From positions 4,836,001 through 4,900,000 of the forward strand of contig NC_087256.1 in the NCBI RefSeq assembly GCF_037042905.1: a stretch of DNA of 64,000 nt. Direction: 5' to 3'. Below, piece by piece: positions 14,988 to 63,544 of the stretch (its first letter is position 1; each line of letters opens with the position of its first letter). Source of the DNA: Lytechinus pictus (lineage: Eukaryota). The position numbers were made by a program, and so were the translations under genes. The notes below the pieces were generated by a model, which was not told the DNA's origin, did no database searches, and was given only the letters and a program-made list of their open reading frames with translations.

Positions 14988-15959
14988 TCAATTAAGTTTC
15001 ATCTTGTCTAGCCAAGCTAACACCTCAGCTCGTTTGCTTCCCTCCAGATAGTCCTCCTCATTATTCTTTGCTCCTGCCTTCCATTTCAGAATGGACTTCT
15101 TGAAGGCATCCTTTGCTTTCAGCACGGTGTTGTTTCGCCATAGATTCACGGTGTCCTCCTGCAGATCTAGTGATGTCTTGCCTCCCGTCAAAGACCTCCG
15201 TCGCATACGAAGCGTAGGCATTCCGTCAGTTGGTAAGGTCACGTTACCGCTATGCAGGTCAGATGACCGAAACGTGGGTTGCTCTTCAATCTTAGGATTC
15301 CTATCGATCATGAACAGTTCTCGAGGAAAGTGGGTAGTGATCTCTGGGATGAATCTCTTCGGAGGTGGAGGAGGTTTCAGTTTGGGTGGTTGGCTTAGAT
15401 ATCGCGGGGACGTTCCACCACGGCGCTCCCTCCAAAGGTCGTGTTCGTGTCTAAACTTCTTGGTGAATAACCCGTAGAGTTCTGGCTGGAATTCGGAATT
15501 GATGGAGAGTTTGGTCTGGCTAGCTGGCAAGTCGAAAGTGATTCCTCTGGAAATAGACTGGCGGGCTATGGCTCGTCGTATTTCAAAGGTTTGTTTATCA
15601 AGGGCTTTACTTGGTATCCAAGAGAAGGCAGATTGTGTTCTGGTCTTAGCGGACCTGCTGTAGTTCGGCACGGAGGCAGCATTCTCTAGCCTAACCCTCT
15701 CGACAGGGTCATCTTCTGGATCATCTGACGAGTAATCCGACTCAGCCGCTCCACCATCTCCATCGTCGTCGTCGTCGTCATTGTCGCATTTATCATCATT
15801 AAGCCATTCCAAACCATTATATGGCATGCTTGACTTACGGCTGATGCTCTCACGAACTCTATCCCAGTCAGCAAGGTCCAAAGACGGGAAGGAATCCCTT
15901 GATTTGAAGTCTGTTGGCCTCCTATGGACCTGCTTGAAGACATCATAAACAGTACACAT
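14988..15959 (-). CDS. Uncharacterised disordered protein 'A' (323 aa from Met49 of the ORF track); RVxF, SILK and C-terminal VxxWLD motif
   Basis: Long GC-richer ORF in AT-rich DNA. Splice acceptor CCCCTCAG|G at 16033 on the minus strand, so the first part of the track ORF is intronic; first in-frame ATG at 15959. Candidate upstream donor GTAAGT at 17581. Confidence 0.82.
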   Translation of the reverse strand: MCTVYDVFKQVHRRPTDFKSRDSFPSLDLADWDRVRESISRKSSMPYNGLEWLNDDKCDNDDDDDDGDGGAAESDYSSDDPEDDPVERVRLENAASVPNYSRSAKTRTQSAFSWIPSKALDKQTFEIRRAIARQSISRGITFDLPASQTKLSINSEFQPELYGLFTKKFRHEHDLWRERRGGTSPRYLSQPPKLKPPPPPKRFIPEITTHFPRELFMIDRNPKIEEQPTFRSSDLHSGNVTLPTDGMPTLRMRRRSLTGGKTSLDLQEDTVNLWRNNTVLKAKDAFKKSILKWKAGAKNNEEDYLEGSKRAEVLAWLDKMKLN

Positions 15960-16141
15960 CGCTGAGGAAGTAAAATAGACCCAGTATTTCAAACAACCGC
16001 ACCCATGTGTTGCATCTACCAGGTTGACATGCCTGAGGGGAGAGATGGAAACGGTAGTCGGAATCAACAAAGATATAATAAAAAACTGACTTTTTAAAAA
16101 CAAATTATTTCTTTCAACGTCGTCATATATGACAAAACAAT

Positions 16142-16376
16142 TACACAGTTGAAAAAATATATATACAACGCTGTTTACTATATGAACCTTACAGTAATTG
16201 ATTAAACAGTTTAAACAAGTGTTTAAATCTTAAGATACAAAGTTTAATTTTCAATATCTAATCTTCAGTAAATTAAACATGATTGTTTAAACGATTAAAC
16301 AAATACTGTACGGTTCATTTAGTAAACAGCGTTGTATAAAATCTTAAACAGCGTTTTTAATATAGTTTACAGTGTA
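16142..16376. mobile_element. Palindromic MITE (TA-CAC...GTG-TA ends); related copy at ~48718-48932
   Basis: AACGCTGTTTACTATATGAACC / GGTTCATTTAGTAAACAGCGTT inverted repeat; the same core sequence recurs near 48752. Confidence 0.65.
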
Positions 16377-19300
16377 TAGATAAACAATGGCGGCAGTGAT
16401 AATGGTGTGTCTGAGTGAGACTTTTTAAATTGAAATACGAGGTATAATAGTTTTATGAGCCAGCAATTTCTTTCCTAATTTATCTTCTTTTATATATATT
16501 CCTTTGTCCCTCTCGTTTCAATTTTCTCAAATTTTATATTTGTTATTACTTCATAATGTCAAAATGAGTTATAATTTTGGGGCAGAACGTGATATACGAA
16601 TGTTAATTTCTTAATGGTCGCAAGAGAGCGAACCAAGCCAGAAAATTTATTTTTAAAATGAAAAATATCGAATTTGTGAAATATTTTGACATAATAGCCG
16701 TTATATCATAATATGTACGCCTTTGCTTTGATAACATGAGCAGGGATATGAGGATAAATGGTTCTAAGACAATAATTTGTTATAATGTCAAATGACCCGA
16801 AGGATTAAAAGTGGAACTGTAAACAGTGCCGCTTTAATGCATGGGATATCCTTCAAATTTAGTTTGTTTGCAAAAGTGGTTATATCCACTTTAGACCATT
16901 CAAATAAAATCTTTTTTTTTAAATTCTCCTATATTGCAATATTCTTATGCGAAACTAAATTGTCATGATGACACTGTATCATGTGAATAAAAAATTAGGT
17001 ATGAACCAAATCTGCCTGTCTTTAAAAAATATATTTCCCCAAAAAATTACTTATGTGGATCTAGCCCCTTTTGCAAACTAACTGAAATGGATCTATCCAA
17101 AAAAAAAAATTCTTTGCCATTTTTGTTCACTTTTTAATGGGAATATCAACTTTTCTTAGGTATAATCTTATTGAGTTACTACAAATCTATAAATTGAGAC
17201 CAACCCAAAAAAATCAAATTTGAAAATGAGCTCTTCAAATACAGATAATAATTAGTTGAGTTTGTATTATATATATATGTTTTCTTAATAGAACACACAC
17301 AAAATCGTCTAGCATGATAAAACAAACAAGAGATTGTATAATCAATTTTTTTCTCAATTTCAGTAATGATGGAAACGAATGGCACCAATCAAAATACTTT
17401 GGCACATCATGAGCATAGAAAATTCGTAATTTTAAGGAGAAAACCACTGATACATATTTAATTAATTCCTCTGATAAATATAAAGTAATTGATTTTGACA
17501 GAGAATATACAGGAAAATATCGGATTGTTAGTATTATCACTATTAAGAAAAAGAAAATTAAAGAAGCCGAAGAAAACTTACTGCTTGTATCACACTGCAA
17601 ATCACTTGTCTTCTAATCTCTTTTATTGTTCGCGCTTGAGACATAAACATGAAAAAACTGCAAAATCTTGACGAAAGCTCAAAAGAACGATAACTTGTCT
17701 ACAATACGAGGGGAATGACGTTGCTTTCTCCTATACTTTCTCATGTTATCTTTTGATCGATTTACTTTTAAGCAGTATCTTGGGACACTTTCTGTGTTTT
17801 TCTAAAGGTAACACCAAACAAAAGATTTATTGATTGAGGTGGGGAAAATGGGAGAGGGCGTTTGTCAAGTTAAGTTTCTTATCCCCATGAGATACCGTAT
17901 GCATGTTCAGTATATATCAATCATAATAATTGTCAAATCGTATTGCATGAACTAGGTCATGCATATGGATAATTGTAAGCACTAATTGCAAATACGCTTC
18001 CCTACCAAGGATAACGTGTACCCAGACAGAAAACATTGCTTTCCTTACTTGAATGTTTTCATGTTTGGTATCATAAGGCGGTTTCAAAAGAGTTGTGGTT
18101 TCACAAAACCTATCAACGCTTTGTCGATCACAACGGTATGGTCGTCTACTTGTTGTTTACATATTTTTGTTTATCAACAAAAATATAGATTGACTTGAGA
18201 AATTTCAATAATCCTTTCTATCTTTATGCGATTAGGTGAATTAATCCTCATTTTCTTTATAAAATGAGATTGTGCGAATGAAATCCTACTAAAGGTTTTG
18301 TCTAATCCTAAAGGTCGATTTCTTAATGATAAACATGATATAGGTATACTAATCATGTTGACGATAAGGTAAGTCCCTATATTTTGTGGAACCACGCCTC
18401 TTATTTCACTATCGATTTATTGTTATCGATCGTCCTTGGTTCAATCAAAGAAGGAGTGTATATAGGTCGGACCAAGCTGTACAGACACAAATCGATATCT
18501 GTTAACATAACTATCGATCATCTTCCTCGCATTGGTGCCCTGCTCATTATTATATAGCTGCCACTATTATCAGCAGAAATATATCTATCCTTGCTGGGGG
18601 TAATTATTATCTTGTAGACAAATCGTTCTATGGTCTGTGACCTATTTTGACAATAGTCGTGTTTTTAAATAATCTAAAACGAAAAGAATTGACTGACACT
18701 GCTCGAGATAAATTGAGCTGATAAAATGTTTTATCCATAAGGTTGCTAAAAAAGGTGTAAAGGAAGACCCTGGTTATCTGGGCTTATGTCAAATTCGACC
18801 TTACTTAGTCATTATATCTTAAATGTTTCAGTCTCATATTGAGCCTTCCTATTTTGGGAAAAATGAAATATATAAAAAAATGAATAGTTAAGTAATTTCA
18901 TTACTGTAGTTTATATTGAACACATGCGTTCTCGAGTTGATCTACGTATATCAACGAACTCTACTTGAAGTGTTACTGAAAACACCGAACATGCCGAAAT
19001 GATTTCCAATATACATGTAATAAGGAATTGAAATATGAAGATGAATTTCAGGGCAAAATTCACAAATATAATTTTCTCGTTTAGAGGTAAATACCACCAT
19101 GAATGTAGGCCTTCATATAAAGTATTTTTAGCATTTTATTGCTTTTTTATTTGAACATTGGGACATTGCATTACAATTTAAACTTTAATTTTGTTTCTCA
19201 TGTGTTTATCAACGATTTTATATCTGTATTTTCTCTGTTACCATGGATACAGAGTAAGCAGATCTAATAAGGTGAAAACTGGCAGATAAGTGATGGAGGT

Positions 19301-20129
19301 TTAAGGATTGATATATATCCCATACCCTTAGTTAAATGTTCAATCAGCTATTTTTGCTTTGACACTTCACAGCGGACCCAGGAGGGGGGGGGGGGGTCCG
19401 TGCACCCACCCCTGGAGGAAAAACATGGGAGAATTTAGGAAAATAGACAATGGAAAGCGATGTAAAATCAAGAGGAGAGGTGTGATTGGAGTGCTGATTC
19501 CGCTTTTCTGGCTTGTTACGGAATTTTGGAAGAAAAGTGGGCCCGCCCTTTGTCAATCTTGGATATGCCACTGAGTATTTATGAATGTGATTGTGGTCAT
19601 GAAATTTTTAATATTTTCAATGGTTTTAAAGTCCAATGTCTGAAAAAGAATACCAATGTAATTGTATATAGACATAGACAGGCACGGAGTGGGAAGATAG
19701 AACAAAAAGAGAAATAGAGAGAGAGAGATGGGGAGAGGGTGAGATAGAGAGGAGAGTGGGAGGGAGAGAGAGGCGGGTAGAAAAAAAAATCGTTGTTTAT
19801 TCGAGTTTAAAGTATAATATATATGACTAATGACTCAACGTTTAAGAGCTCACATTCGTGAAGATCATACTCTATTTAATCATTTATTTTAATTTTAGTG
19901 GACAATAAAAGCCGATTATATACAGTTCAAAAGTTCATGAGTCAGAATTTTGGCCAAGATTTCCTTTGATATTGATCACAACATAATTTATGACAACATA
20001 AGATGTGGGTTGACTTTACCATTTTTACGATATGCATAAAAAACACTTTAAATCATTAAAATTCTGACTGTCATACATGTAATTACACTGAATGAATTGA
20101 TGTAAATGTAATGATTCCATGAAAATTCT

Positions 20130-20290
20130 CGATTTCACTCTATAATGTATTCTGTTTTTACTTAATTGCTATGATGTCGAGTTAATTGTTAACTGCAGGG
20201 CGCCTATGGAAAGCAGTTTTGCATAACTGAACAGGCCTACCCTGCAGTATAAAAAAAGATAACCAATAAATAAATAAATAAATGAAAATA
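20130..20290 (+). mobile_element. LINE 3' end with (TAAA)n tail
   Basis: Stem-loop-like CAGGGCGCC...GGCCTACCCTG followed by AATAAATAAATAAAT, typical of CR1/L2 3' ends. Confidence 0.45.
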
Positions 20291-22259
20291 TAATGAAATA
20301 GATTATTTCAATACCTTAACTATATGATAAAATGTAACCACGAATGGATTTCATGAACATACTATACATCGGGGGTCTCCCGGCTCGCCCTGCGTGCCAC
20401 CTTGAAACCCCAAATGTCACCCGCCTCAATATCTACCACTATATTACATATATCCTTTTCATAAGCAAGCCTTTTATCGCCATCCCCCCCCCCCCACACA
20501 CACACACACACGTCCAACACAAATATCCATGAGTACAGAAACAGCCATTTAACTGTAAAAAAAAACAATGAAACTGACCAGGGAATCAAATGAAAACACG
20601 ACAATGTAAACACACAAGGAAAAAATAAATAAAGATAACCTGGATCAATATAATCATTGTTCTTAACAATAAAGAGTACATTGTGACAGATTTACCCCCC
20701 CTCCCTCCCCCCTCACATGCAGATACCGAGACGCTTCATATACGCCCTCTTGCGAGAAAAACAACAACGTCAATACACAAGTAACAACAAATTAAAAAGA
20801 TGTCGTAAAGTTTATTCTCATAAATAATAAATGTTCTATTAACATGATTAATGAGATGGATACATTTACAAAATGAATATCGTCAAACAAATCTGTTTCA
20901 AGTCACCACATGCAAGCAATAAATATAAAGATATTCCACTCAAACAAGAGGTACAATCGGACGAATACACCAATATGAGGAGGGATTTGGCATTTTCTGA
21001 AATTGGAATTGTTTAGGGGACAGTGATTCTTTATTTTTGTCATTTTCACAGAGACACATATATGTAATTTAAGTGGTTGGTTCTGAATTTGAAAATCAAC
21101 CTAGTTTTATGTGGTGAAAATTACTACCAACTTTTACAGACCCCAAATCCCCAATGTGTGAGCATATCACTGGCGTACAGGTGGGGCTTTGGGCCAGGGA
21201 ACCACCCCCTAAAAAATCAGGACCAAGAAAAAGAACGAAAATTAAAGAAAAGGGTTCAATATGCTCTCGCTTTCTAAATATCATGTCAAAAACTTTTGTG
21301 CCCCAAAACTCAACATTTTGCTCGCTCGCATATTTTTAGAACCATATCTTTTCCCTAAAAATATTTGATTCATTACGCCACTGAGGAATATATAAACTAT
21401 GGTCTACAGAAATGTTGAAATGACATTTGAAATATAATGCAGAGGCCTACAAATGGGTCATTTTTTTCATTACCATAAATCTTAATGATGTTACAATCCT
21501 CAAAATAGTAGGTATCAGATACGCGAACAAGGATAGTTATTCATTATTGATCAGGAATAATGCATTATCTAGAAAGGATTATCTACCATGTTTCACAAAC
21601 AATAGGAGTGACATGAAAAAGCAATTGAAGGCAGTCAATCTATGTTAGTATTAATTTTCTTGGAGCGGTCCACGTCGTGCTCCTTTAATAGAATATCGAT
21701 TTAAATAATTTGTTAAATTTGATGTGAAGAAGAAAAAAACCCATTTGTTTAAACATTCAAGAAACTGAGTAGATTAGTCGACCCCATTAAGTTAACAATC
21801 TTTTATGAATAATTGTTTAAACATGTGACGACATTAAAGCAAATACAAAGAATTAAAAAAGTAAGGAAAGAAAAATTAGATTATACAAAAAAAATCACCA
21901 AAAAAGAACCTAAACTCTCTTTGCGTGCTTTACGACTGATTGGTGTTTTTTTTCGTTAGTGTCCGGTAAGTAATAATGATTATGAATTTAAAAAATGGAA
22001 ATTCATACAAAAAGGTGTTGTGGAAACAAAGAAAATTTGACCTTGCGAAAATAATTAGAATAAAATAGTAATTATTCAACCAAATGTGAAGATGAAAATG
22101 AATAAAACAAGTTGAAAATTTATCTCCTCATTTTCTGGTAGATGATACGTGAATTCATAAATGTATTTATACGACTGACAGTGGCCGTTTCGCTATTTCA
22201 GATTAGTAATAATTTTTACATAAAGTTCCGACGAATTCCGAGAGAATATTTGTAATATT

Positions 22260-23240
22260 TCAGAGTGGTATGATGGTGATTTTATTACCTTCATCATCAC
22301 TTTGGTCATCAAGTGTCATTTTGACCACTGAGTTGTTAACTCCATCCAACCATTTTGAAATTCTCTCATTCAGTTCGGAGTCACTTTCATCTTGATCTTC
22401 GTACACGTAGTCACCAACGACGTCGCTCTCGGGGTCGATTTTCTCCTTGGCGATGTTGTTATTATTCATGACGTTCGTAATGGAGATCGTAGGATGGTCG
22501 TAGGTAGCTCGTAATTTGTTCTGTTTGGGAGGCGGTACCTCGGGGAGGAAACTATTGTTCGAGTTGTCACCGAGGTCATCCATTGAATTTGAACTGATGC
22601 TGAAACTAGCTCTGTACTTACGACCATGGTGTGTAATTGTCTGAGGATTCCCTGTTGCATCACCAGCGATTGGTCGTAATTGGCCTCTCCCCCTTTCAGC
22701 GTCATCTCCTAATGGACTTTGGTCATTGCTCGCTCGGCTATCAACCCGGCGACAAAAATCATTGACCTTCGCAGCAACCCGGTTGAATTCCCGTTCCGAA
22801 TGCTGCATCATTCTCCGTTTCACCATCGAGGAACTGGAATACCGCCTTGCTCTGACGTTCGGTAATCTCCCGTTGGCGATCAGGGCTTCGCCGCGTTGTT
22901 GAGTCAGGACATTGGCCAGGGTAAGACCCGTTGGTACGGAGAACGACCTCGTCAGAGGAGGTGGCTGACCACCGAACCGTTTCATCGGCAAGCCTGATTT
23001 GTCGACAGGCGGCGACGGAGTTGGCCGCAATGGGGCTGACAAAACCCGCATTTTGCTATAAGTTTGAAATGATGATGATGTCGACGACGATGACCGCCGG
23101 GTGCGCTGTTGAAGGAGAAGACGGTCTGGGATTTTCTTCTCTTCCTTCTCTTGTTTCCCACGTTCGTCATCGTTTGGGAGACAGAATGACACTGATTTCC
23201 GTAATGTTCTCTGCCCAGGTTGTATCTTGTCATCATTCAT
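22260..23240 (-). CDS. Uncharacterised disordered protein 'B' (326 aa); RVxF (RKSVSF), PxIxIT (PTISIT) and C-terminal IxxWLD motif
   Basis: 326-codon ATG ORF in a single coding exon. Acceptor TTTCACTCACAG at 23477 and donor CAG|GTAGG at 23772 define a likely 5'-UTR intron. Confidence 0.85.
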   Translation of the reverse strand: MNDDKIQPGQRTLRKSVSFCLPNDDERGKQEKEEKKIPDRLLLQQRTRRSSSSTSSSFQTYSKMRVLSAPLRPTPSPPVDKSGLPMKRFGGQPPPLTRSFSVPTGLTLANVLTQQRGEALIANGRLPNVRARRYSSSSMVKRRMMQHSEREFNRVAAKVNDFCRRVDSRASNDQSPLGDDAERGRGQLRPIAGDATGNPQTITHHGRKYRASFSISSNSMDDLGDNSNNSFLPEVPPPKQNKLRATYDHPTISITNVMNNNNIAKEKIDPESDVVGDYVYEDQDESDSELNERISKWLDGVNNSVVKMTLDDQSDDEGNKITIIPL

Positions 23241-28760: not shown

Positions 28761-28774
28761 ATCAATTACCAATC

Positions 28775-37600: not shown

Positions 37601-37624
37601 TGATACAGGTATCTTGCACTCTGT

Positions 37625-39209: not shown

Positions 39210-39212
<3 letters not shown>

Positions 39213-43948: not shown

Positions 43949-44136
43949 NNNNNNNNNNNNNNNNNNNNNNNNNNNNNNNNNNNNNNNNNNNNNNNNNNNN
44001 NNNNNNNNNNNNNNNNNNNNNNNNNNNNNNNNNNNNNNNNNNNNNNNNNNNNNNNNNNNNNNNNNNNNNNNNNNNNNNNNNNNNNNNNNNNNNNNNNNNN
44101 NNNNNNNNNNNNNNNNNNNNNNNNNNNNNNNNNNNN
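43949..44136. other. Assembly gap (188 N)
   Basis: Run of N. Confidence 0.99.
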
Positions 44137-50369: not shown

Positions 50370-51227
50370 TCAGAGTGCTTCTTCTTGGATAGCCGTCAAG
50401 GTTTTAGAATCAATCGAATCTTCAATCTGAGCTGTCTCTACATTCTCCAACCAAGATAAAATCCGATTCTTTGTGCACTCATCGACGAAGGCATCGCTTG
50501 GAAACGTTGTCCTCGCAAACTTCACTTTGATGTCTCTATCTTGTCTCGACAGCTTGGTCATACTCACTGTTTCTCGAAGGTCCTTCTGCATCGCTTTCGC
50601 TCTTAAGGTACGCGGTGAATCAAAGGACGAGGAAACTATGGCGGACATGGTACTTGATGACTTGGTCTTGTCACCCGTCTTGCCGTCGTATTGAACGGTA
50701 TAGACAACGTGTCGGGAAACGGGTCGCTGATCGATGCTGGGAAGCCTCTGGTGAAGGAGATCTACATCGGGTTCGTTGACGAGGTTATCGAGTCGACATC
50801 GTTGGTTTAATGTGTCCTCCTTGGTAAGCTGGTTGTCGACATCGGAAAGATCATCAGCGTCTTCACGAGGCACAGGAGTTTCACATCTCCCTCGCCTCCC
50901 TAAGAGTCTCGGTTGAGGCACTGAACTCGGTTTCACTGAACACGTGATCGAAGCCGTCGACGCGTCCGACGACATGGCCACCCCGCTGCTCCGTAAGCTG
51001 ACATCACGGGAAGAATTCGAGTCACTCGTCTGTTCGTTCCGACCGGATCGGATTAGCCGAAGTTGGCTTCGTTTGATCCGATACTGAGATCGGGTTGTGT
51101 TCGGTGGTGATCGGGTGGAAGAGATCGGCATGGTGGGGGATGTTAGCTGTCCAAAACTACCTCTGGAAGGAGACGGATCCCCGCAAAGAGATCTGAAACG
51201 ACAAACATATTCTTCCATTAAAGTCAT
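50370..51227 (-). CDS. Uncharacterised disordered protein 'C' (285 aa); RVxF (KVKF), C-terminal IxxWLE motif and LxxIxE (LTAIQEE)
   Basis: 285-codon GC-richer ATG ORF in a single coding exon. Candidate 5'-UTR intron from donor CAG|GTAAG (~54058) to acceptor TATTTCCAG (~51771). Confidence 0.83.
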   Translation of the reverse strand: MTLMEEYVCRFRSLCGDPSPSRGSFGQLTSPTMPISSTRSPPNTTRSQYRIKRSQLRLIRSGRNEQTSDSNSSRDVSLRSSGVAMSSDASTASITCSVKPSSVPQPRLLGRRGRCETPVPREDADDLSDVDNQLTKEDTLNQRCRLDNLVNEPDVDLLHQRLPSIDQRPVSRHVVYTVQYDGKTGDKTKSSSTMSAIVSSSFDSPRTLRAKAMQKDLRETVSMTKLSRQDRDIKVKFARTTFPSDAFVDECTKNRILSWLENVETAQIEDSIDSKTLTAIQEEAL

Positions 51228-52948: not shown

Positions 52949-55773
52949 GAGACACGTAATGGTAGACAATCTGCTATGAAGTTGATTAACTGAGGTTCTT
53001 TTCAGACATTAATGCGAATTAGAATCTGTATGACCCTTGATTTCAGCAGGGATACAAGCTAAAATGCAAGCAACTGATTGCTACATGTATAATTCTATCA
53101 ATCTTTGTGAAATGAATTTTGAACTGAAATGATAAATTTGCTTGTGTTTTAGGCTATTCAAGATCGTTTCGTATCTATATGACAATCTGAATACCATCAT
53201 CACATGTGTTTCCATCCTGGTGCCATAAGATAAAATAACGACACGTGACACAGCCAAGCCTTGATTTTGAAATTACCCCATGTTCTTTCCTCAGACCTGT
53301 CAATAAAACATTATATTTATATTCCTATTTCTTACTGTTTTAGAAGAAGAAGACGACGAAGAAGAAAAAGAAGAAGACGACGTAGAAGAAAAAGAAGAAG
53401 AAGAAAAGGTCTGTTTTATTTTTATTTATTATCAATTTAATACGACATATCTTTTTTTATTTCTTGTTAGGGTTATCAGTCTGCATTCTATATATAATGC
53501 ACAAACAATATTCCCATATTTTGTATATCATGATATCACTATAAAAGAATAAGGGTCTATGTAATAGTTTCAAGACGGGGCATGAAAATATGGTTTCTCA
53601 TGTTTATTTAGATGAAAATAAAATGCAAAGCTACGAATGTAAGATTTTATTTTGAAAAGCAACCTTTCGAATACGACCCCTATACCGTGAGCTTACCACA
53701 TGAACAATGAACTCATAATGTACTTGAAGCAAGACGCACTCGAACTTTGTACTAATAATTTGTTCTTTATCACAAGCAAATAATAATTATATCTCTTTAA
53801 ATAGAAACGTCAAGTCATTATGTAGTCACCACAGTGAGATCTTACTTTTATTAATGTTTTAGTCTTCTCGTACACGATCCAAAATGAATATCCAATTTAA
53901 AGCAATGGCGGGACTTAATCTCACCAAAATATTTTATCGCATAGGATGAGAGAATGAAAATTTATTACAGATACACTGCCAAATTATAAATAATAATTTG
54001 TGAAACTAATAACAATGATGACCATGTTACACGTTGGATTCATAATTTCAATTCTTACCTGATTTAAGTGCTTCTTATCACTTATCTAGGCTTCATCTTA
54101 CAGTTGTTGAATTCTTGCTAATTAATCCTTAGACAACAGAGGCCAATATGTGATAAATATTACCACCAACATTCCGGGAATACACTTGCAGATTAATATC
54201 AATATCCAACGATATTCAGCAGATTTTCCTTGAAATCGATTTAGTTCTGATGAATAAATCCTCAGAGGTGACCTTTGAAATTGAAATGAATTTAAAAAAA
54301 AAAAGGACAGCCAACTTTTTTCTGTGATTTCTTCAGGAAGAATACTAGTATTGATCAAAATATTTACCAATTAACGAAACAAATAACATATTAATGAGGC
54401 CGTCAGCTTCAAGTTCGAGAAAACGTTAAACCACGTCCGCCAAGGTTGAAGAAGATCCTTTGCCATACCGGTAATCCCGGCTAATGACACCGGTGAGTCT
54501 GCTCTACGTGTCGAATACCCGAGTTCAGTTCCACGGTCTAGCAAACAAATCAAACACTCGATGACGATTCTTTGAATACGATTTTACCCCCAGGAAGCTG
54601 AAAATCATCAAAATAAAGTATTATTCATTTGTGATATAGAATTCACCAGCCGGGATCTGCGGTCGTGGTTCGCGAGAGGCTTAATAACAAATCATATTCA
54701 AGATTGGTGCCTCGATCGGCATTTTTCGACAAGAACACAAACAATAGAGAAGAAGACAGTTGTCATGGGGTTTGTTTGTAAAAGAGATGTGACCTTTGAG
54801 CATTTTAATTCTGATGTATATATTGACATGCTTAGTAATATATAGGTAAACCCAAAAGACGTATTTCAACTTTGTTGTGCCGTTTTAGTGGTAGACTATC
54901 TCTTACTGATAATGACGATAGTAATTCAGTTTGCATTCTTTGAAATTATCGCTGTATTTCATGGTAATAATCATTTTAATTTCTGGCCATAATTATTATG
55001 TTAAAATTAAGGGTAAATTATCGGTTAGTCTAATTCTCAGTTTATCCAACTTCAAAATGGTCTAAACTCATTTGTCTACAACCAGTTCGTCTATTTCCCA
55101 CTTGGTCCTATATCCTATTCGTCTAATTACCAGTTGGGCTAAAAAAAATGAAGTTCACGTTGATTATTCTGTTATTTTGAGGCATTATACTATAAGGGTC
55201 GATTTAACGAAAATTCACTCAGTTTGAAAAGTATATAAGAACATAGAAGCGATATCAATTCTAATGCATTTTCATCTCTCATATTTTAGCACTAATCCTA
55301 GGGCGGCGATGGGGGCTATACGTAATTATGATATAGTTATACCGTCCATGTATCACAAAGAGGTATACTAAAATGATTAAATCATATAACTTAATCTATG
55401 TTTGATTTGTGTTTATTTTTCTACACCACTTTCAAGTTTTTGTTTTTAAGGGGTGGGGAGAGTGAGGAAGGGAGGGGGCTAGGGAGTGAGAAGGGAGGGG
55501 TTTTTAATTCATATACACAAAATTTAATGTCAAAACAAAACATGTTATAATTGAACATCTGCAGAATCATAAAAGCGAATAAAAATCAATGTATGTATGT
55601 ATTTACATATATATATAAATATGAACAGACGTGTTTTTCACGACTGTTTCAGAAACGGATTTTGAATTCTCTTTTTTGTCACATCAAGGGCACTGACGAA
55701 GAGTGTGACTTTACCTTTCATTTTTTGAGAGCTATGCTCCTTTTAAAATCTACGATTTTATTTCTACGGCATT

Positions 55774-56092
55774 NNNNNNNNNNNNNNNNNNNNNNNNNNN
55801 NNNNNNNNNNNNNNNNNNNNNNNNNNNNNNNNNNNNNNNNNNNNNNNNNNNNNNNNNNNNNNNNNNNNNNNNNNNNNNNNNNNNNNNNNNNNNNNNNNNN
55901 NNNNNNNNNNNNNNNNNNNNNNNNNNNNNNNNNNNNNNNNNNNNNNNNNNNNNNNNNNNNNNNNNNNNNNNNNNNNNNNNNNNNNNNNNNNNNNNNNNNN
56001 NNNNNNNNNNNNNNNNNNNNNNNNNNNNNNNNNNNNNNNNNNNNNNNNNNNNNNNNNNNNNNNNNNNNNNNNNNNNNNNNNNNNNNNNNNNN
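55774..56092. other. Assembly gap (319 N)
   Basis: Run of N. Confidence 0.99.
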
Positions 56093-56674
56093 GTACTGTA
56101 TTGGATGTATTTTTCACCAAGAACCTAGACCTACTTTATTTCTCTTATAAATAATTTCTAGTCTAACCATAACAGAAGTGAGTGCAGACAAAGTCACGCC
56201 ATGTCTATTCATATACCAATATCACTTCACCCGGCCCCAATTAGTGATACGATCACTCAGGCATGCCCTTTTCTGCATCGCAGTCACACCAAATGGAAAT
56301 GTTCTAGACAGATCAACATAATCAACGTCATTCCGAATCACTATTACTATATCAATCGATCGGTTAAGAGTTTTTTTTGTGAGGTGTGACTTGCTTCTTC
56401 CAGTGATAGATTATCACTCGGGTAGGAATAAGAATAAATCACAGTTCAAAAACAAAAAATACAAACAATAAATTTAAACGGCCTATTTTGACCATTGTTA
56501 TTTAGTTTTTAAACTGGGTAATGTACATATAAAATTTTACCAGTCGACTTTCTTCGATTACAGTGATTCTTTGTCGGATCACGTCAGACGTTCTAAAGCT
56601 TAGCTTAATGAGATCAATTGTGTATATTGTAAACATTGATAAACGTGAATAGTTAATGACAATATTGTCATTAA

Positions 56675-57258: not shown

Positions 57259-58128
57259 TTAACTATTCACTACTGCACATCTATACCCAAGGATTGGAGT
57301 TAATTTCCCGAATGACTGTAATGTTTGTTATTCTTTATTTTTCTCAAAAAGAATGATAAACATTAACAGTATATTGGGCCCGAGGCAGTCGAGGTCGGGC
57401 CCAGACCGACACCGATGACACCCGGTGTAAGGCTCTTGGAGATCGAGCGAGATTAATTTCTATTTCAATCGTAAAACCTGGAATTGTGGTGCCGTTTTAA
57501 CACTATAAAATGCTAAACTACTAAACCTCTGCATAATTTTGTAAGTTTCCAAATATTAAGAGTCAATCTTATTATCACGATGGATATTATTGGTTTTGGA
57601 GAATGTACATGGAGTATGGAGTTACTCCATGCTTTGACATCGTGAAACTATTGCCAAACCTAGTTTTGAGTATGCGAGAGACAACAACGGCCGAAAGAAA
57701 TAAATTTGAAAAGAGAAAATTGCGTTATAAATCATAATTTTATAGTTTGAGTGGGAAGCTTTTGACCATAGTTTTGACAGCATTTCACACTACAATCCCC
57801 AATCCCCATGATTGTGGCCCCCAAAGCTATTATGTAGAGTAATAATTTGCTCCGCTTTATGGATCTGTTCTATTCACTGAACTCGAGGGTCAACTTTAAT
57901 AACAGAGTATGAATTGAAATCCCAGTAAACTAACCCCCTGCTTAGAATTGTGTCAAAAGTCAAGCAAGGTTCACTTGAATTATAACTTCAAAAGAAATGG
58001 ATAAAAGATAAATCAGAGAGAGAGAAAAAAGAAAGAGGAAGGGAGAGAGAGTGAGTGGCAGGGGCGAGGAAAAGGTGAGCCTAGTGTGATTGTTATCAAC
58101 ACCGATGAATATATTTGCTTGGCGTGCA

Positions 58129-58138
58129 GTGACGTCAC
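58129..58138. promoter_or_regulatory. Full palindromic CRE (GTGACGTCAC) with a nearby inverted CCAAT box
   Basis: TGACGTCA at 58130-58137, ATTGG at ~58178. Motif match only. Confidence 0.35.
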
Positions 58139-59276
58139 AATATGATATTATTCTCAGGTTCAAGGCCACGGCCTCTATTGGTCAAAGTCACGTTTTTATT
58201 AGTACACGCGAGTTTGAAATAATTTGAGGCTTCGATGAGACCATAACTATGCCTGTTCGTTTGAGAAGCCAGGTCCACAAAGAATATTTTGATCCCTGTT
58301 AATGTGAGGCTCGAGTGGGCCAGGAGGGGGGGGGGGGGGGGGGGGCTTTATCAACGTCTTCTCACGTTTTGTGTTTCATCTTAACACCAACAATTTGTTT
58401 CAAAATTCTGTTGTTTATTTTTAATTGAGATATTGAATCATAGGAAATGTCAAAAGTTACTTGAAATGCCATGATTCGATTTGGGATGTATGTATTATCT
58501 GCCTCGGGTTATTTTCGAAGCGATCCGGGAAAGCAATACAGGGGCTTGTGATTAAATTCGTTTATGAACACAATTCTCATTGGCAAATCGGTATATAAAA
58601 ACTTTTCGAAGTAGTATGATTAAATTTCATTGTGAAATATTATTTTTTTCATCTGATGAATTGGGGCTTTTTTTATTTGCATTTCATACATCAAATATGC
58701 ACAATGAAGTTTAGAGTCGAAAATGTTAAAAGGTGAACTTGCAATTACATTGCACAGGCGCGGATTTTATATGAATACTTTGACAAGCAAGCAAAAAAAA
58801 ATCTTTATAAAATGATGGGCATATTTTCTTCGAAAAAAAAGCGCCAAGTATAAAGTAAATTCAATTGTATTAAAAAAAAAATCATCACTCATTTTTGCAA
58901 TAAATACATTTTACATGCCGCTTCATTAATTTTCAAATTTTACGGGATGTGCCTGCACATTTCACCCCACCCGTAGATTTTTCCTAAAAAAATAAACTTT
59001 CACTGACTTACATTAAGTCAACAAAACGCAAATACAAAACGCAAATACAAAAAATAAAATAAAACGAAATGTAAATTATTTCAACTAAAAATAAAACAAC
59101 AGAGAAAATAAACACATCCAACTAAAAAAAAGGCTTCCCCCCAAAAAAAATTGAATACATTGAAATAAATGAAATAAAGAAATTTAAAAAAAATTAACAT
59201 AATAAGAAAATCAAAATGAAAAAAAAAGAAAGTAAAGTTAAAAAAAAAACAAAAATATGAAAGAAAACAAAAATGC

Positions 59277-59281
59277 AAAAA
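59277..59281 (-). terminator. RNA polymerase III oligo-T terminator of the SRP RNA gene
   Basis: T5 directly after the RNA, followed by ~240 nt of further T-runs on the minus strand. Confidence 0.8.
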
Positions 59282-59578
59282 GGATTGGGTTTCACTGTGT
59301 TGAACGGGCTGTAAGCCGCCGACTATTCACAGGCGCTATCCCACTACTGCTCCACACGGGGACTTTTGCCTGCTGCGTTTCCGCCCTGGGCCAGTACGTC
59401 CCTCCTTAGACGACCTGGTTGCCCGATCCTCCGACCAAGTAACCATATCGATGCCGAGCTTAGCGCGGACGCCCGATCGCCATAGACCGACGACATACAG
59501 GACTCCCGCTCTCAAACGATCCACCAACCCCGACTTCCAAAGCAGCTGGATTACAGGCGCACGCCACAACGCCCAGTC
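59278..59578 (-). ncRNA. 7SL: Signal recognition particle RNA (7SL / metazoan SRP RNA)
   Basis: Minus strand starts GACTGGGCGTTGTGGCGTGCGCCTGTAATCCAGCT (Alu domain). It contains the helix-6 GGAG loop and helix-8 GGCCCAGGGCGGAAACGCAGCAGG (GAAA tetraloop, SRP54 site), then GGGATAGCGCCTGTGAATAG, and ends CCCAATCCTTTTT; ~300 nt. Confidence 0.97.
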
Positions 59579-62300
59579 GAATTTCCATTGGTAAAATAAG
59601 GATATTATCTTGGAGACTATTCATATAGCGGCGTAGAGGGCAACGTTCCACTGCTAGCTCAGGCTGATGCACTCAGATTCCAAATAATAGCAAAACATAT
59701 GTGAATGATCGCATTGCTTTTTTATATCGAATTCTCATACTTTTATTAGTACAAGCATTAGCACATACATATTGCAAACCATTATTGACCACCGATAATA
59801 TTACTGTTCAATCAAGTAACGCGAATAAAAATATAAGGCACTTTTTATCTCCACAAAATTGACTTGTGTACACATGCAAGTTTACCCAGTTCCTGTGTTT
59901 GACAATTCTTTTTAAAATTCTTTATTTATATTTTTGTGTTCAGTCAACAATTTCAAAGCTCTTAAGGACTGAAACCGTCGACACGGCGGAAAAAATAAAG
60001 AAAGGGGATAGCGAAATGATAAGTAAATAATATCGACAAAAGTGGTTACCTATACTATACTCCGGGTTTATTTTTTTGTTCATTTTACACTCAGCTTTAT
60101 TATTTAAATAAACGATAGTTTCAAATCGCCTTTATCAATTTTTGATTGAAATTTCATTTTAAACAGAGCACTGTCAAATTTTGACAAGAATCCCTCAACA
60201 CGGTTTCCAAATATGACGGTTCCTGGTCAATTTGTTATGGAGACTTAATATAATAAACTCATGCAAATTCATCTTAATTCATATTTCCAGGGTTTCATAC
60301 ACATAATTCTCCCCATGCTTCCTCCATTTTCCCCCACTTTGGAGCCTCCTTCCCCGTCGGAATTGAAATTATAATCTATTGTGACTTTTGAAAAATACAT
60401 TTTCCTTTCACGTTTTCTACAATGACTTATTTCACTGTAAAAACGTTGTTTAAACATTTCAAGCACACTGTTTAAGCCCGTCAATCCAACCATGCCAACA
60501 GCCATTGTTAAAAGTTTAAACATGAATAAGAACATTCACACTTTCTTAATTGTGGTGCAGTACTGGAATTTGCATTTCGAATCTCGATTATCATATATAA
60601 TTTTTTTACTTTGTAACAAAATGATATACGCAATGATACCTACATTCAAAATTTGAAAAAAAAATATGAAAATGCGGTAATATTATGTTTTTTTAAATCA
60701 AAATGACGAATTTCTGATGCGTGATCGATTCACTATAGAATCATAATAGATTGTGATATGGGACATATCAACATTGATAATTTCTTTCTCTCTATCACAG
60801 TAATTATGTTGGCTTTATGAAGTTTTGGGATTTTAATCCTTAAATAAGGACGTTCGAGTGAAATCAAAAGGGGTGAACAAGAAAAATCTTGTTATGCATG
60901 GCACCATTCTGCGTACAGATCAGTGGCCACGGAAATAAAAGGTTAGTACAGCTCCCTCTATCGTTCATTCCAGTACAGGGCCATTCGTTTTCAAAGGGGC
61001 CCGATCGAAGAGACATTGAACAATGGGAAATAGCTTTAATCTAAGAGTAATGGGTAGATGGAGATCGATACGAGATATTATCCAACATAATACCATCTTA
61101 TTCAGTGTGGGAGGCAGCTACACGAACACAATCAATGGATTATAACAACAGGAGTATACCAACGGGGGGTCGTGAAGCGTGATCTTGTAGTAATTTCAAC
61201 GCATTAAATTCGGCAAACAACATTCAACATGATACATGGACTTGTGATAAGAAAATAATAAATACTGAAGCACGGGCAGAAATCGAAGATTAACAACGAG
61301 TTGGAATTTATTGATATTGGAAGTTGTGATGACATCTTATGATTTCTTTTCGTTGACGGATAGCCTCATCTTATTTCGAGCTAGTTGAAAGAAATTCACC
61401 GGACCTGCCGTTGTGCTCACCATGGATACATGTTACAAGTCTGATAAAAGGTAAATATATATATTCATTTTTTTCAAACATTTTTTAGCTAGTGTAATCG
61501 CTTTCTTATTTACTTGAATCAATATTTCATACTTATGCAACCAATATTTTATGCAACCAATATAATATCAATCACCAATACATAGATAGTAAGATAATCC
61601 TAAATCACTTCCCCGCCTATAGTCCCATCGTAGGTTTAGAATCTAAAATTTAAAAGTTTTAGTTTCCAATACATAGAAAAGTATAACAGAAATATTCATT
61701 GCAGCCCTACTAGTCATGCCAGATGAAAACTTAATTTTTATGTAAAGTCATCATGAATTTAAGTGTTTAAAAGTTGGCTTTCGTAACTTGGTTAGTTATA
61801 TTAATTTTGTTGCGTGATGAACCAATGTTGTTTATATTTTGATCGTCAACATTCACATAAGATCCTGCAAAGCAGTTAATAAGTGTTTTCATTAAAAAAA
61901 ACATAGGAAATGTAAGTCAGATGACGTGATGGTCTTTAATCATTGAACTGTAGATGGACGCACAGTGCATAAAATAGACATGATTTACATGCCAACACAA
62001 TTATTTCACTCGAAATAAATGTTTATTTTAATATGATTAAACAATTTACCAATATATCATATTCTACCATGGAGTTACATGACTTGTATGACTGCCGGAG
62101 CCACCGATCTACCGTCGAGGGGGGCCGATGCGGCATCATACCGAATCAACACAAACAATTGAAATCAACTGGCCTGTTTCTGACTCAACTCATCTGTGTA
62201 ATTCATTGAATCGTGAAGCTTTGCAATAATTGGATATGACTGTCAGTTACATGATCAACTTCTTTTTTATTTTGATCGTACAGGTGAAGCTCATGACGCA

Positions 62301-62390
62301 ATGCTGATACGTGAATATATTGATGATGTTAGATCCCTTGAGGATGAGAACGGTTCGATGTCTAGTATCCCAAAATGCAACTTCAGATGA
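62301..62390 (+). other. Overlapping upstream ORF (29 aa, MLIREYIDDVRSLEDENGSMSSIPKCNFR*)
   Basis: Starts 17 nt into the exon that begins at 62284 and overlaps gene D by 16 nt; gene D is in its -1 frame. Confidence 0.5.
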
Positions 62391-63544
62391 TGCCTGCCGA
62401 TACGGGCTTATCAAGTTCTGAATCGGACAGCAGTAGTAGCAGCATCAAGATGACGTTAGGGTCGCCATCATCACCAAGTAAACTCAGGGGTACCTTCACG
62501 CTCTCGTCGGCCACTGTAGATCCTCTCACCAACTTCGACTCGTGGCCTACGACCACAGGGTTCACCTCGAAAGCGATCACGGAGCCGCGACCAGGAGTTG
62601 GACGCGGTCGTCTCCCGTCGATTGGCGAGTTGAATCCGGCCTCGAAACTAGTTTTCCCTGCTCAACAGAGTTTCATGCAGATGTTCACAACCCCGGGAAC
62701 TGATGGAAGTATTTACTCGAAAAGGAAGAACCTTTATGCGGGTTACCATCAACAGGCTCAAGGTAGACCGGTCAAAGACCGCATCATCAAGCATAACCAA
62801 CCGGAAGTGCAGAATAAGTCTCGTGTAGAACCGTTACCCGAAGAAACTGATGTAACCAACGCACCAAAATCTTTCCTGCAGGGAAGTGGATTGTTAGAAC
62901 CTAGTAAAAATGTATGGACGGCGCCATCGGACATGACCAAAGGTCCTAAACATGTTGCATTGTTTCCAACGAGATCACCGCCATCAAAGTTGACCGCTCA
63001 ACGAGAAACGGTGACCATTGACGGTAAGATCCGTCGAGTCCGGTTTCTTAGCGCTGACCACACCCCTCTCAGGGAAGATCCAGAGTTCAAGAAGCTTTTG
63101 GGAAACACAAAGACAGTGAGCGAGATCAACCGGAAAACTGCACCAGACACTAAGGCAAAACCTACAGAAGACAAGAAAGTCAATCTGAGATCTGTGACCG
63201 TATCAAGGACAAGAAAAGCGAGTCTTGATGGGGGCGAGGGAGGTAAGATACTTCGGCCTACCCCAAAGCTTGACTCGAAGCAGGAATCGCCAGATGTGTG
63301 GTTAGAAAGAGCCAGAAAACTTCGTGCTTCGAAAGACAAAAATGCCAAAAAGACAGAGGGTACCTGCAAGCAATCCGAATCCATGAAGTTCCATGAGGAA
63401 GAGAATAATATGGACATAGATGATGATAAGACGTTGTGTAATGAAATTAAACATGTTAACTATTGTGATGAGAAGAAAACAAGATGGGTTGTAAGGTGGC
63501 TGGAGGAGGTTAATAGACAAAGTCATTTTGATATTATTGAGTAA
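62375..63544 (+). CDS. Uncharacterised disordered protein 'D' (389 aa); LxxIxE (LPSIGE), RVxF (RRVRF) and C-terminal VxxWLE motif
   Basis: 389-codon ORF in a single coding exon; likely 5'-UTR intron from AAG|GTAAAT (61451) to TTTTGATCGTACAG (62283). Confidence 0.87.
   Translation: MQLQMMPADTGLSSSESDSSSSSIKMTLGSPSSPSKLRGTFTLSSATVDPLTNFDSWPTTTGFTSKAITEPRPGVGRGRLPSIGELNPASKLVFPAQQSFMQMFTTPGTDGSIYSKRKNLYAGYHQQAQGRPVKDRIIKHNQPEVQNKSRVEPLPEETDVTNAPKSFLQGSGLLEPSKNVWTAPSDMTKGPKHVALFPTRSPPSKLTAQRETVTIDGKIRRVRFLSADHTPLREDPEFKKLLGNTKTVSEINRKTAPDTKAKPTEDKKVNLRSVTVSRTRKASLDGGEGGKILRPTPKLDSKQESPDVWLERARKLRASKDKNAKKTEGTCKQSESMKFHEEENNMDIDDDKTLCNEIKHVNYCDEKKTRWVVRWLEEVNRQSHFDIIE

What the first reader, a model, noticed from the sequence alone, without database searches (positions are those of the whole stretch)
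15084..63046. All four cluster proteins carry a PP1 RVxF motif, with a combinatorial set of other phosphatase-docking motifs
Seen: RVxF ([RK]-x0-1-[VI]-x-[FW]) in A RGITF (15534-15548), B RKSVSF (23184-23201), C KVKF (50517-50528) and D RRVRF (63032-63046). Extras: SILK in A (KKSILK, 15084-15095); an exact calcineurin PxIxIT in B (PTISIT, 22476-22493); PP2A-B56 LxxIxE in C (LTAIQEE, 50379-50399) and D (LPSIGE, 62612-62629). Established: these are the docking motifs of PP1, calcineurin and PP2A-B56, and they act from disordered regions. Inference: the cluster encodes phosphatase-targeting scaffolds with a shared anchor (the WL helix), each with PP1 and in B-D a second phosphatase. Caveats: RVxF is short and degenerate, its position differs between the four proteins, and SILK normally lies N-terminal to RVxF whereas in A it is C-terminal.
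Basis: partly seen in the sequence, partly recalled or inferred. Interest (0 to 1): 0.75.

Follow-up and report, generated by a model that had tools for sequence, protein, structure and literature searches.

The report
Sea-urchin disordered proteins with phosphatase-docking motifs
A tandem cluster of uncharacterised, mostly disordered sea-urchin proteins shares a tryptophan-leucine helix near the C-terminus; two of them carry a phosphatase-1 docking motif unchanged across sea urchins, but the other proposed docking motifs are not conserved or could not be tested, and no binding has been shown.

Summary
All motifs are present at the stated coordinates, and both assembly gaps lie between genes. 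The window comes from a Lytechinus sea urchin. Genes A-D are single-exon ORFs that NCBI annotates as "uncharacterized protein". A fifth paralog (E) lies 8 kb beyond the window, and a sixth candidate lies on another contig.

Ortholog alignments give a split result:
- **RVxF conserved:** B (RKSVSFCLP) and D (TIDGKxRRVRFLSADH) are invariant islands in fast-evolving disordered sequence, out to relatives at 41-46% identity.
- **RVxF not conserved:** C's KVKF is not kept (KMQF, NVEF, NVQT).
- **RVxF in E:** it is kept only in echinoids.
- **A:** no orthologs outside Lytechinus could be obtained.
- **B56 LxxIxE:** conserved in D and in C.
- **PxIxIT in B:** lost in S. purpuratus.
- **SILK in A:** it lies on the wrong side of RVxF and its conservation could not be tested.

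A family-wide [R]LPx[IV] motif overlaps D's LxxIxE, so other functions are possible there.

Shuffling gives P=0.006 that all four proteins would carry a loose RVxF. A PP1c-D complex prediction returned no verdict.

B and D are plausible new PP1-interacting proteins. The "combinatorial code" for all four proteins is not established. Interest is moderate.

The parts
14988..15959 (-). Gene A: 323-aa single-exon CDS starting at the ATG at 15957-15959, matching L. variegatus LOC121425486
   Evidence: The exact protein is in the collection as a called gene, and its cluster representative is XP_041477488.1. Contigs of runs X1/X2 cover 14115-14717 and 14972-16019 but not the flanks, with no splice joints. 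No Pfam family.
15534..15548 (-). A: RGITF, a loose RVxF match (aa 138-142)
   Evidence: Conservation could not be tested. It fails the [KR][KR][VI]x[FW] consensus because the second residue is G.
15084..15095 (-). A: SILK match (aa 289-292), about 150 aa C-terminal to RGITF
   Evidence: The order is wrong relative to RVxF. It sits in the lysine-rich stretch just before the WL helix.
15000..15023 (-). A: WL helix VLAWLDKM
   Evidence: The WL profile hits it at E=1.6e-4 in the whole genome.
22260..23240 (-). Gene B: 326-aa single-exon CDS, orthologous to L. pictus LOC129272859 and S. purpuratus LOC100888925
   Evidence: The ESM Atlas model has pLDDT 0.43, indicating disorder.
23184..23201 (-). 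B: RKSVSF (RVxF); the island RKSVSFCLP is invariant in all orthologs
   Evidence: conservation 1.00, flanks 0.64, top 3% of windows. The N-flank is basic and the C-flank acidic.
22476..22493 (-). B: PTISIT, a PxIxIT match found only in Lytechinus
   Evidence: S. purpuratus has PTITPT and P0003 has PSLKEQ. Conservation is 0.61, not above the flanks.
22932..22949 (-). B: RSFSVP, an invariant RSxSxP pattern (14-3-3 mode-1-like)
   Evidence: (R98, S99, S101, V102 and P103 invariant). The motif's meaning is recalled from memory.
22827..22871 (-). B: GRLPNV followed by RARRYSSSS, the family [R]LPx[IV] motif plus a basophilic serine cluster
22338..22361 (-). B: WL helix ISKWLDGV
   Evidence: The WL profile gives E=5e-10.
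50370..51227 (-). Gene C: ORF of 285 aa (NCBI models start at the internal M33 and give 253-255 aa), orthologous to L. pictus LOC129272860 and S. purpuratus LOC100888993
50517..50528 (-). C: KVKF, an RVxF match that is not conserved
   Evidence: orthologs have KMQF, NVEF and NVQT. Conservation is 0.56, below the flanks.
50379..50399 (-). C: LTAIQEE, a conserved C-terminal LxxIxEE
   Evidence: LTSIQEE and LSVIKEE in orthologs; L277, I280, E282 and E283 are invariant.
50733..50747 (-). C: RLPSI, the family motif; here it is not an LxxIxE (LPSIDQ)
   Evidence: conservation 0.95, top 8% of windows.
50439..50462 (-). C: WL helix ILSWLENV
   Evidence: The WL profile gives E=2.7e-9.
62375..63544 (+). 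Gene D: 389-aa single-exon CDS, matching L. variegatus LOC121425529, S. purpuratus LOC575349 and a Diadema setosum ortholog
   Evidence: AF2 gives mean pLDDT 43.8, with 320 of 389 residues below 50.
62600..62629 (+). D: GRGRLPSIGE, an invariant island. It fits LxxIxE, and also RxxLxxI and RxRxxS
   Evidence: G74, G76, R77, R79, L80, P81, S82, I83 and E85 are invariant. Diadema has LPSIEE.
63008..63061 (+). D: TVTIDGKIRRVRFLSADH, an invariant block holding the canonical RVxF RRVRF (63032-63046)
   Evidence: conservation 1.00, top 6% of windows. AF2 predicts a low-confidence beta-hairpin at 210-223.
63449..63541 (+). D: conserved C-terminal block that includes the WL helix VVRWLEEV (63488-63511)
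   Evidence: AF2 predicts a helix at 366-382 with pLDDT up to about 79. The WL profile gives E=2.2e-12.

Best explanation
The window holds four members (A-D) of an echinoderm-restricted, uncharacterised family of intrinsically disordered proteins. They are encoded by tandem genes, each with a single coding exon. A fifth member (E) lies just outside the window and a sixth candidate lies elsewhere in the genome. The family signature is a C-terminal amphipathic helix centred on an invariant Trp-Leu. In B-E there is also an upstream [R]LPx[IV] motif.

On this common frame individual paralogs carry different short linear motifs. In B and D the RVxF match is most likely a genuine PP1 catalytic-subunit docking site. 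It is invariant in otherwise rapidly diverging disordered sequence, has the usual basic N-flank and acidic C-flank, and in D fits the strict [KR][KR][VI]x[FW] consensus. B and D would therefore act as PP1-interacting proteins: targeting subunits, substrate specifiers or inhibitors. B's serine at the x position offers phospho-control of binding.

D (LPSI[GE]E) and C (C-terminal L[TS]xI[QK]EE) may also recruit PP2A-B56.

C's KVKF and B's PTISIT are lineage-specific chance matches. A's RGITF and SILK are unsupported.

Shown here: the motifs, their conservation pattern, the disorder, the gene family and its taxonomic range. Inferred: any phosphatase binding, and any role for the WL helix as a common anchor.
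For: The motifs are at the stated coordinates. The chance that all four proteins carry a loose RVxF is 0.0056, and strict RVxF occurs in B, D and E at 0.02-0.05 each.

B: RKSVSFCLP is invariant, including in a 46%-identical ortholog whose flanks differ. D: 21 of 23 residues around RRVRF are identical between Lytechinus and Diadema at 41% overall identity, and GRxRLPSIxE is invariant. C: the C-terminal LxxIxEE is invariant at L, I, E and E.

D is predicted to be disordered apart from short local elements, and B likewise (Atlas pLDDT 0.43).

The genes are real. NCBI models exist in L. variegatus, L. pictus, S. purpuratus and Diadema. C-D synteny holds in S. purpuratus and D-E synteny in Diadema. 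Contigs that cover only the ORF support transcription of A.

The family signature is also real: the WL-helix profile ranks D, B, C, E and A as the top five hits in the 811-Mb genome.

The RVxF consensus, the x-position phospho-control and the RVxF-plus-LxxIxE precedent in RepoMan come from PMC6363451.
Against: No binding evidence exists. The PP1c-D(198-250) complex prediction gave no verdict.

RVxF is not ancestral to the family. E orthologs in sea cucumber, brittle stars and a crinoid lack it (KS[VI]RS or nothing at the homologous position). The sixth member has none. C's is degenerate in sister genera.

D's RVxF sits inside a 20-residue invariant block with a predicted beta-hairpin, so its conservation could serve another function. 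E's RVxF lies at the end of a predicted helix.

D's LxxIxE overlaps the family-wide LPx[IV] core, which in B, C and urchin E does not fit LxxIxE (LPNVRA, LPSIDQ, LPDILD). It also overlaps the RxxLxxI and RxRxxS patterns.

The same proteins contain other islands that are equally conserved. A could not be tested. No ΦΦ or Arg motif is evident downstream of either RVxF.
Confidence: 0.45

Rival explanations
1. The proteins are real, but none docks a phosphatase. The RVxF and LxxIxE matches fall in conserved islands that serve other roles, such as kinase sites, 14-3-3 sites, binding to an unknown echinoderm partner, or local structure. Their fit to phosphatase motifs is a by-product of scanning K/R/S-rich disordered sequence with many degenerate patterns.
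For: Loose RVxF is expected in 19-37% of such proteins by composition alone. RVxF is absent from non-echinoid E orthologs and from the sixth member, and C's is not conserved. D's motif lies in a longer invariant block with a predicted hairpin. B also keeps RSxSVP and RARRYSSSS islands that point to basophilic kinases and 14-3-3.
Against: The joint chance of all four proteins carrying RVxF is 0.0056, and strict-pattern hits in three of five paralogs are very unlikely by chance. The B island is only nine residues long, centred exactly on the motif, with canonical flank charges. D fits the strictest consensus and is unchanged across the deepest echinoid split sampled.
Confidence: 0.35
2. The invariant GRxRLPSIxE of D, and the [R]LPx[IV] motif of the family generally, is not a B56 site. 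It is instead a degron of the D-box type (RxxLxxI) or an AGC-kinase phosphosite (RxRxxS), controlling the stability or phospho-state of the proteins.
For: R77, R79, L80, S82 and I83 are all invariant in D, and R77 and R79 are not needed for LxxIxE. The family-wide core is LPx[IV], with the Glu position variable (Q, A, D, G, P) in B, C and most E orthologs.
Against: The middle residue is S, D, N, E or A across paralogs, so a phosphoserine is not general. The RxxL arginine is absent in B, C and E. Crinoid (LPSIKE) and brittle-star (LPDIGE) E orthologs and all D orthologs do fit LxxIxE.
Confidence: 0.12
3. The ORFs are not genes, or are fragments of larger spliced genes, so the 'proteins' and their motifs are artefacts.
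For: The ORFs listed for A and E begin at non-ATG codons. The raw RNA reads sampled (6% of two runs) gave no reads on A. An acceptor-like site precedes D's ATG.
Against: Full-length orthologous ORFs are kept open across echinoids, and for E across all echinoderm classes. NCBI models have the same length. Indels seen in A are in-frame within the CDS, and the one frame-breaking indel lies upstream of the ATG. Synteny is conserved.
Confidence: 0.03

Closest known systems
RepoMan (CDCA2), a disordered scaffold with an RVxF (RVTF) site for PP1 and an LxxIxE site for PP2A-B56
   Same: D combines an upstream LxxIxE-type motif with a downstream canonical RVxF in a largely disordered protein, and both are conserved. 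This is the same two-phosphatase logic described for RepoMan in PMC6363451.
   Different: There is no sequence similarity and no Pfam or PDB match. No ΦΦ/Arg extension or KiR-SLiM is recognisable after the RVxF. The motif spacing is about 135 residues. D is restricted to echinoderms, and no binding has been shown.
Inhibitor-1 / DARPP-32 (PPP1R1 family), small disordered PP1 inhibitors with an N-terminal KIQF and a downstream basophilic phosphosite
   Same: B has its RVxF near the N-terminus (residues 14-19) followed by Arg-rich Ser clusters (RTRRSSSS, RARRYSSSS). It is disordered.
   Different: The Pfam scan gave no hit to any family at E<=1, apart from one weak hit to an unrelated one. The RTRRSSS stretch is not kept in the most distant ortholog. 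B is longer and has the WL helix. The comparison with I-1 rests on the recalled I-1 sequence.
KNL1-type SILK + RVSF tandem PP1 docking
   Same: A has one SILK and one loose RVxF match. B's KSVSF has Ser at the x position, like the Aurora-regulated RVSF (PMC6363451).
   Different: In A the SILK lies about 150 residues C-terminal to the RVxF, whereas known cases have it N-terminal. A's RVxF has Gly at the second position. Conservation could not be tested.
Calcineurin substrates with PxIxIT / LxVP
   Same: B in Lytechinus has an exact PxIxIT (PTISIT). E orthologs in all echinoderm classes end with an LxVP-like K.I[VI]L.VP.
   Different: B's PxIxIT is lost in S. purpuratus and beyond.

Membership tests
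RVxF-type PP1-interacting proteins (PIPs) | Sequence fits the RVxF consensus [KR][KR][VI]{FIMYDP}[FW] (PMC6363451) | tested here: inconclusive
   D's RRVRF fits the consensus fully. B's KSVSF and E's KTVKF fit the Meiselbach-type pattern but not the double-basic rule. A's RGITF and C's (I)KVKF fit only the loose pattern.
RVxF-type PP1-interacting proteins (PIPs) | The motif lies in an exposed or disordered region | tested here: met
   D: 320 of 389 residues have pLDDT below 50, and the motif sits in a low-confidence hairpin. B: Atlas model pLDDT 0.43. E is an exception, with its motif at the end of a predicted helix.
RVxF-type PP1-interacting proteins (PIPs) | The motif is more conserved than its flanks in orthologs | tested here: inconclusive
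   Met for B and D. Not met for C. For E it is met only within echinoids. A could not be tested.
RVxF-type PP1-interacting proteins (PIPs) | Physical, RVxF-dependent binding to PP1c | not testable with these tools
   The complex prediction of PP1c (L054:125-1105) with D residues 198-250 returned no verdict.
PP2A-B56 LxxIxE clients | An LxxIxE motif in a disordered region, conserved, ideally with acidic or phospho residues downstream | tested here: met
   D has LPSIGE/LPSIEE, invariant at L, I and E. C has L[TS]xI[QK]EE at the C-terminus, invariant at L, I, E and E. Binding itself was not tested. In D the motif overlaps the family LPx[IV] core, which lacks the Glu in the other paralogs.
Calcineurin PxIxIT clients | PxIxIT conserved in orthologs | tested here: not met
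   PTISIT occurs only in Lytechinus. S. purpuratus has PTITPT and P0003 has PSLKEQ.
SILK-RVxF tandem PP1 binders | SILK lies N-terminal to RVxF | tested here: not met
   In A, SILK is at aa 289-292 and RGITF at aa 138-142.
Any curated protein family (Pfam-A), including the DARPP-32/inhibitor-1 family | A significant HMM match | tested here: not met
   A-D have no family at E<=1, except one weak unrelated hit for B. There is none for E orthologs or Diadema D, and no PDB sequence relatives.

The most novel reading that the evidence does not exclude
An echinoderm-specific family of disordered proteins uses a common C-terminal Trp-Leu helix (plus a short hydrophobic tail) to bind one shared, unknown partner or structure. 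After tandem duplication in sea urchins, its members independently acquired different phosphatase-docking motifs: RVxF at non-homologous positions in B and D, and LxxIxE in C and D. The cluster would then be a natural set of interchangeable phosphatase adaptors for one cellular site.
Probability: 0.15. Interest if true: 0.6.

Novelty: new member of a known kind. Interest (0 to 1): 0.38.

Why it matters
If B and D do bind PP1, and C and D bind B56, they would add a lineage-specific family to the known phosphatase regulatory subunits. Sea-urchin eggs and embryos are a classic system for cell-cycle and fertilisation phosphatase biology, so such regulators would be directly usable there. The cluster would also show docking motifs being gained and lost on a shared scaffold after gene duplication. 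For now it is a set of uncharacterised genes with two well-conserved candidate PP1 sites. That makes a reasonable bench target, not a surprise.

Tried and rejected
1. **Complex prediction.** PP1c was an animal-type, intronless cDNA-like ORF from a metagenome contig, L054:125-1105, 97.6% identical to the urchin PP1c exons. It was paired with D residues 198-250. The result was no verdict (ipSAE 0.01 and 0.20, mark 0.34), which is evidence neither way.
2. **Paralogy by sequence.** Protein searches of the own genome with A, B and D found only themselves at significant E-values. hhalign between family profiles aligned only the WL region, at E 0.004-0.2. Paralogy therefore rests on the WL profile, motif order and tandem position.
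3. **Known families.** Pfam, PDB sequence profiles and the ESM Atlas gave nothing. The best Atlas scores were 0.75-0.80, in the noise range, including a 'GLC7-interacting protein 1' cluster at 0.78 that I do not count.
4. **Orthologs of A.** S. purpuratus B is not on record as a called gene, and the ENA contigs gave no DNA.
5. **MyPhoNE reading of the WL helix.** This was rejected: only the hydrophobic and Trp positions of RxxQ[VIL][KR]x[YW] fit, and the helix lies C-terminal to RVxF at variable distances. The consensus is recalled from memory.
6. **Literature.** No paper mentions the LOC identifiers, and none on RVxF in sea urchin concerns these genes.
Full report
**Nature of the window**

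The sequence is eukaryotic (GC 0.29-0.43). It belongs to an 811-Mb genome, G000 contig C12. The proteins it encodes are identical or 97-99% identical to NCBI models of Lytechinus variegatus and L. pictus, so this is a Lytechinus sea urchin.

The finding's four "cluster proteins" are long ORFs:
- A: 14988-16103(-). The real CDS starts at the ATG at 15959 and gives 323 aa.
- B: 22260-23240(-), 326 aa.
- C: 50370-51227(-), 285 aa.
- D: 62375-63544(+), 389 aa.

An NLR-like NACHT gene lies upstream at 10077-11915.

**Assembly gaps**

The gaps at 43949-44136 and 55774-56092 lie between B and C and between C and D. No ORF or motif of the finding touches them. Only the listed ORF 55551-56150(+) runs through a gap, and it is an artefact. 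I did not try to fill either gap.

**The observation**

All eight motifs are at the stated coordinates. In 5000 composition-preserving shuffles each protein has a 0.19-0.37 chance of at least one loose RVxF. The joint chance for all four is 0.0056. The stricter Meiselbach-type pattern is present in B and D, and also in the extra paralog E, at 0.02-0.05 each. Exact LxxIxE in C and D has 0.04-0.06 each, SILK 0.02, and exact PxIxIT below 0.01. The single hits were picked post hoc from many possible motif classes, so they mean little alone.

**Are the genes real, and are they one family?**

Each ORF has full-length orthologs annotated as "uncharacterized protein":
- B: L. pictus LOC129272859 (97%), S. 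purpuratus LOC100888925 (76%), and a partial ENA echinoid protein (46-51%).
- C: L. pictus LOC129272860, S. purpuratus LOC100888993, and an ENA protein at 42-46%.
- D: L. variegatus LOC121425529, S. purpuratus LOC575349, an ENA protein at 48%, and Diadema setosum at 38-41%.
- A: only L. variegatus LOC121425486.

C and D are neighbours in S. purpuratus.

In Diadema the gene downstream of D is a further disordered protein with the same hallmarks. Its Lytechinus ortholog, E, lies at G000:C12:4907792-4909105, about 8 kb beyond the window end.

A profile search with E over 1.84 billion representatives found orthologs in a sea cucumber (Apostichopus japonicus), a brittle star (Amphiura filiformis, plus two unnamed relatives) and a crinoid (Anneissia japonica). 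It found nothing outside echinoderms.

None of the proteins hits Pfam or any PDB sequence.

Pairwise and profile-profile comparisons between A, B, C, D and E align only the region around an invariant Trp-Leu near the C-terminus, at E 0.004-0.2. However, a 38-column profile of that region, searched against the whole genome in six frames, returns D, B, C, E and A as its top five hits (E 2e-12 to 1.6e-4). Next comes one more 369-aa disordered ORF on another contig (E 0.04). The "WL helix" is therefore a genuine family signature.

B-E also share an upstream [R]LPx[IV] motif: GRLPNV in B, QRLPSI in C, GRGRLPSI in D and NLPDI in E. This motif is invariant as LPxI in E orthologs of every echinoderm class.

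AlphaFold2 models of D and E are almost wholly low-confidence, with a few short helices that include the WL helix. The Atlas model of B is also low-confidence. Together these fit intrinsic disorder.

For A, contigs of two runs cover 14115-14717 and 14972-16019 but none of the flanking DNA, and show no splice joints. They carry a 3-nt in-frame indel inside the CDS and a 20-nt indel just upstream of the ATG. This pattern fits an unspliced transcript with the 323-aa CDS. Two cautions apply: the runs are only guessed to be RNA, and the two raw RNA runs, read to 6%, gave no reads on A.

| Protein | Motif | Result in orthologs |
|---|---|---|
| B | RVxF (RKSVSFCLP) | Identical in all four sequences, including the 46%-identical one whose flanks differ. 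Conservation 1.00 vs 0.64 in flanks; top 3% of windows. |
| D | RVxF (RRVRF) | Lies in TIDGKxRRVRFLSADH, unchanged from Lytechinus to Diadema. Conservation 1.00 vs 0.68; top 6%. |
| C | RVxF (KVKF) | Becomes KMQF, NVEF and NVQT. Not conserved. |
| E | RVxF (K[TS]VKF) | Kept in echinoids. Brittle stars have KS[VI]RS; the sea cucumber and crinoid have nothing. The motif sits at the end of a predicted helix. |
| E | RVxF (PRVTF, second) | Present in Lytechinus and strongylocentrotids only. |
| Sixth member | RVxF | None. |
| D | LxxIxE (LPSIGE/LPSIEE) | Invariant at L, I and E. Conservation 0.94 vs 0.62; top 6%. |
| C | LxxIxE (LTAIQEE) | Appears as LTSIQEE and LSVIKEE; L, I, E and E invariant. 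|
| B | PxIxIT (PTISIT) | Becomes PTITPT in S. purpuratus and PSLKEQ further out. Not conserved. |
| A | RGITF, SILK | No informative orthologs could be obtained. SILK lies about 150 residues C-terminal to RGITF, the wrong order for known PP1 binders. |

**Interpretation**

The RVxF consensus is (K/R)(K/R)(V/I){FIMYDP}(F/W). Ser or Thr at the x position allows Aurora-type phospho-control. RepoMan combines RVxF with LxxIxE (PMC6363451).

D fits the strict consensus. B fits the broader one, has Ser at x, and has a basic N-flank and an acidic C-flank. On that basis B and D are good candidates for PP1-interacting proteins, and D and C are candidates for B56 clients.

Several points argue for caution:
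- RVxF is not an ancestral family trait.
- D's motif is embedded in a 20-residue invariant block with a predicted hairpin.
- D's LxxIxE coincides with the family-wide LPx[IV] core, which lacks the critical Glu in B, C and urchin E.
- That same D island also fits the RxxLxxI (D-box-like) and RxRxxS (AGC-kinase-like) patterns. These pattern meanings are from my own knowledge.
- The proteins have other islands that are equally conserved, for example RS[FL]SVP and RARRYSSSS in B.

**Binding test attempted**

Sea-urchin PP1c genes are multi-exon. I therefore took an animal-type PP1c ORF from a metagenome contig (L054:125-1105), which is 97.6% identical to the urchin exons. I submitted it with D residues 198-250. 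The result was "no verdict", which counts neither for nor against binding.

**Verdict**

- A real, echinoderm-restricted family of disordered proteins with a shared WL helix exists.
- Two members carry strongly conserved RVxF sites, and two carry conserved LxxIxE sites.
- The calcineurin and SILK elements and C's RVxF do not hold up or could not be tested.
- No phosphatase binding has been shown.

If the hypothesis is true, this is a new lineage-specific member of the well-known class of motif-based phosphatase regulators. Interest is moderate.

Another agent of this scan reported a conserved SILK+RVxF cassette in an unrelated gene of the same genome (s1-317533). That is a separate locus and did not enter my reasoning.

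Noticed in passing
G000:C12:4907792-4909105 (+) = L013:1522-2835, about 8 kb beyond the window end: A fifth paralog, E (437-aa ORF), has NLPDI, KTVKF, PRVTF and the WL helix. It is the slowest-evolving member (51% identity to Diadema) and has orthologs in sea cucumber, brittle star and crinoid. All of these end with an LxVP-like K.I[VI]L.VP tail.
   Followed up: yes
G000:C1:26660023-26660100, inside L101:1588-2697: A sixth candidate family member lies on another contig: a 369-aa Ser/Pro/Arg-rich ORF with an acidic run followed by TRQWILHWLEGVE. It has no RVxF match.
   Followed up: partly
window 22932-22949 (-): B orthologs keep an invariant RS[FL]SVP, the textbook 14-3-3 mode-1 pattern RSxpSxP (pattern recalled from memory). 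It is followed by an invariant block, GLTLxNVLTxQR.
   Followed up: partly
window 62600-62629 (+): D's invariant GRGRLPSIGE also fits a D-box-like RxxLxxI pattern and an AGC-kinase RxRxxS pattern, overlapping the LxxIxE reading.
   Followed up: partly
window 62262-62285 (+): A pyrimidine-rich stretch ending in 'cag' lies about 90 nt upstream of D's ATG and looks like a splice acceptor, which would mean a 5'-UTR intron. The Diadema D model starts at the Met aligned with Lytechinus M26. This bears on the scan's separate note about a uORF and frameshift at 62301-62422. I did not test it.
   Followed up: no
window 10077-11915 (+): A 612-aa ORF carries a NACHT domain (E 5e-16): an NLR-like gene next to the cluster.
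   Followed up: no
window 16058-16451 and 16846-17239: Very high contig depth (hundreds to thousands) and many loose read ends in both RNA and guessed-RNA runs indicate dispersed repeats just upstream of gene A.
   Followed up: no
window 55551-56150 (+): The listed 199-aa ORF runs through the N gap at 55774-56092 and is an artefact of the gap.
   Followed up: yes
ENA assembly ERZ26222911 (P0003, P0006, P0011, P0042): One ENA assembly holds both a B ortholog at least 90% identical to S. purpuratus B and a 51%-identical B ortholog. It therefore contains DNA of at least two echinoid species. Its DNA could not be fetched.
   Followed up: no
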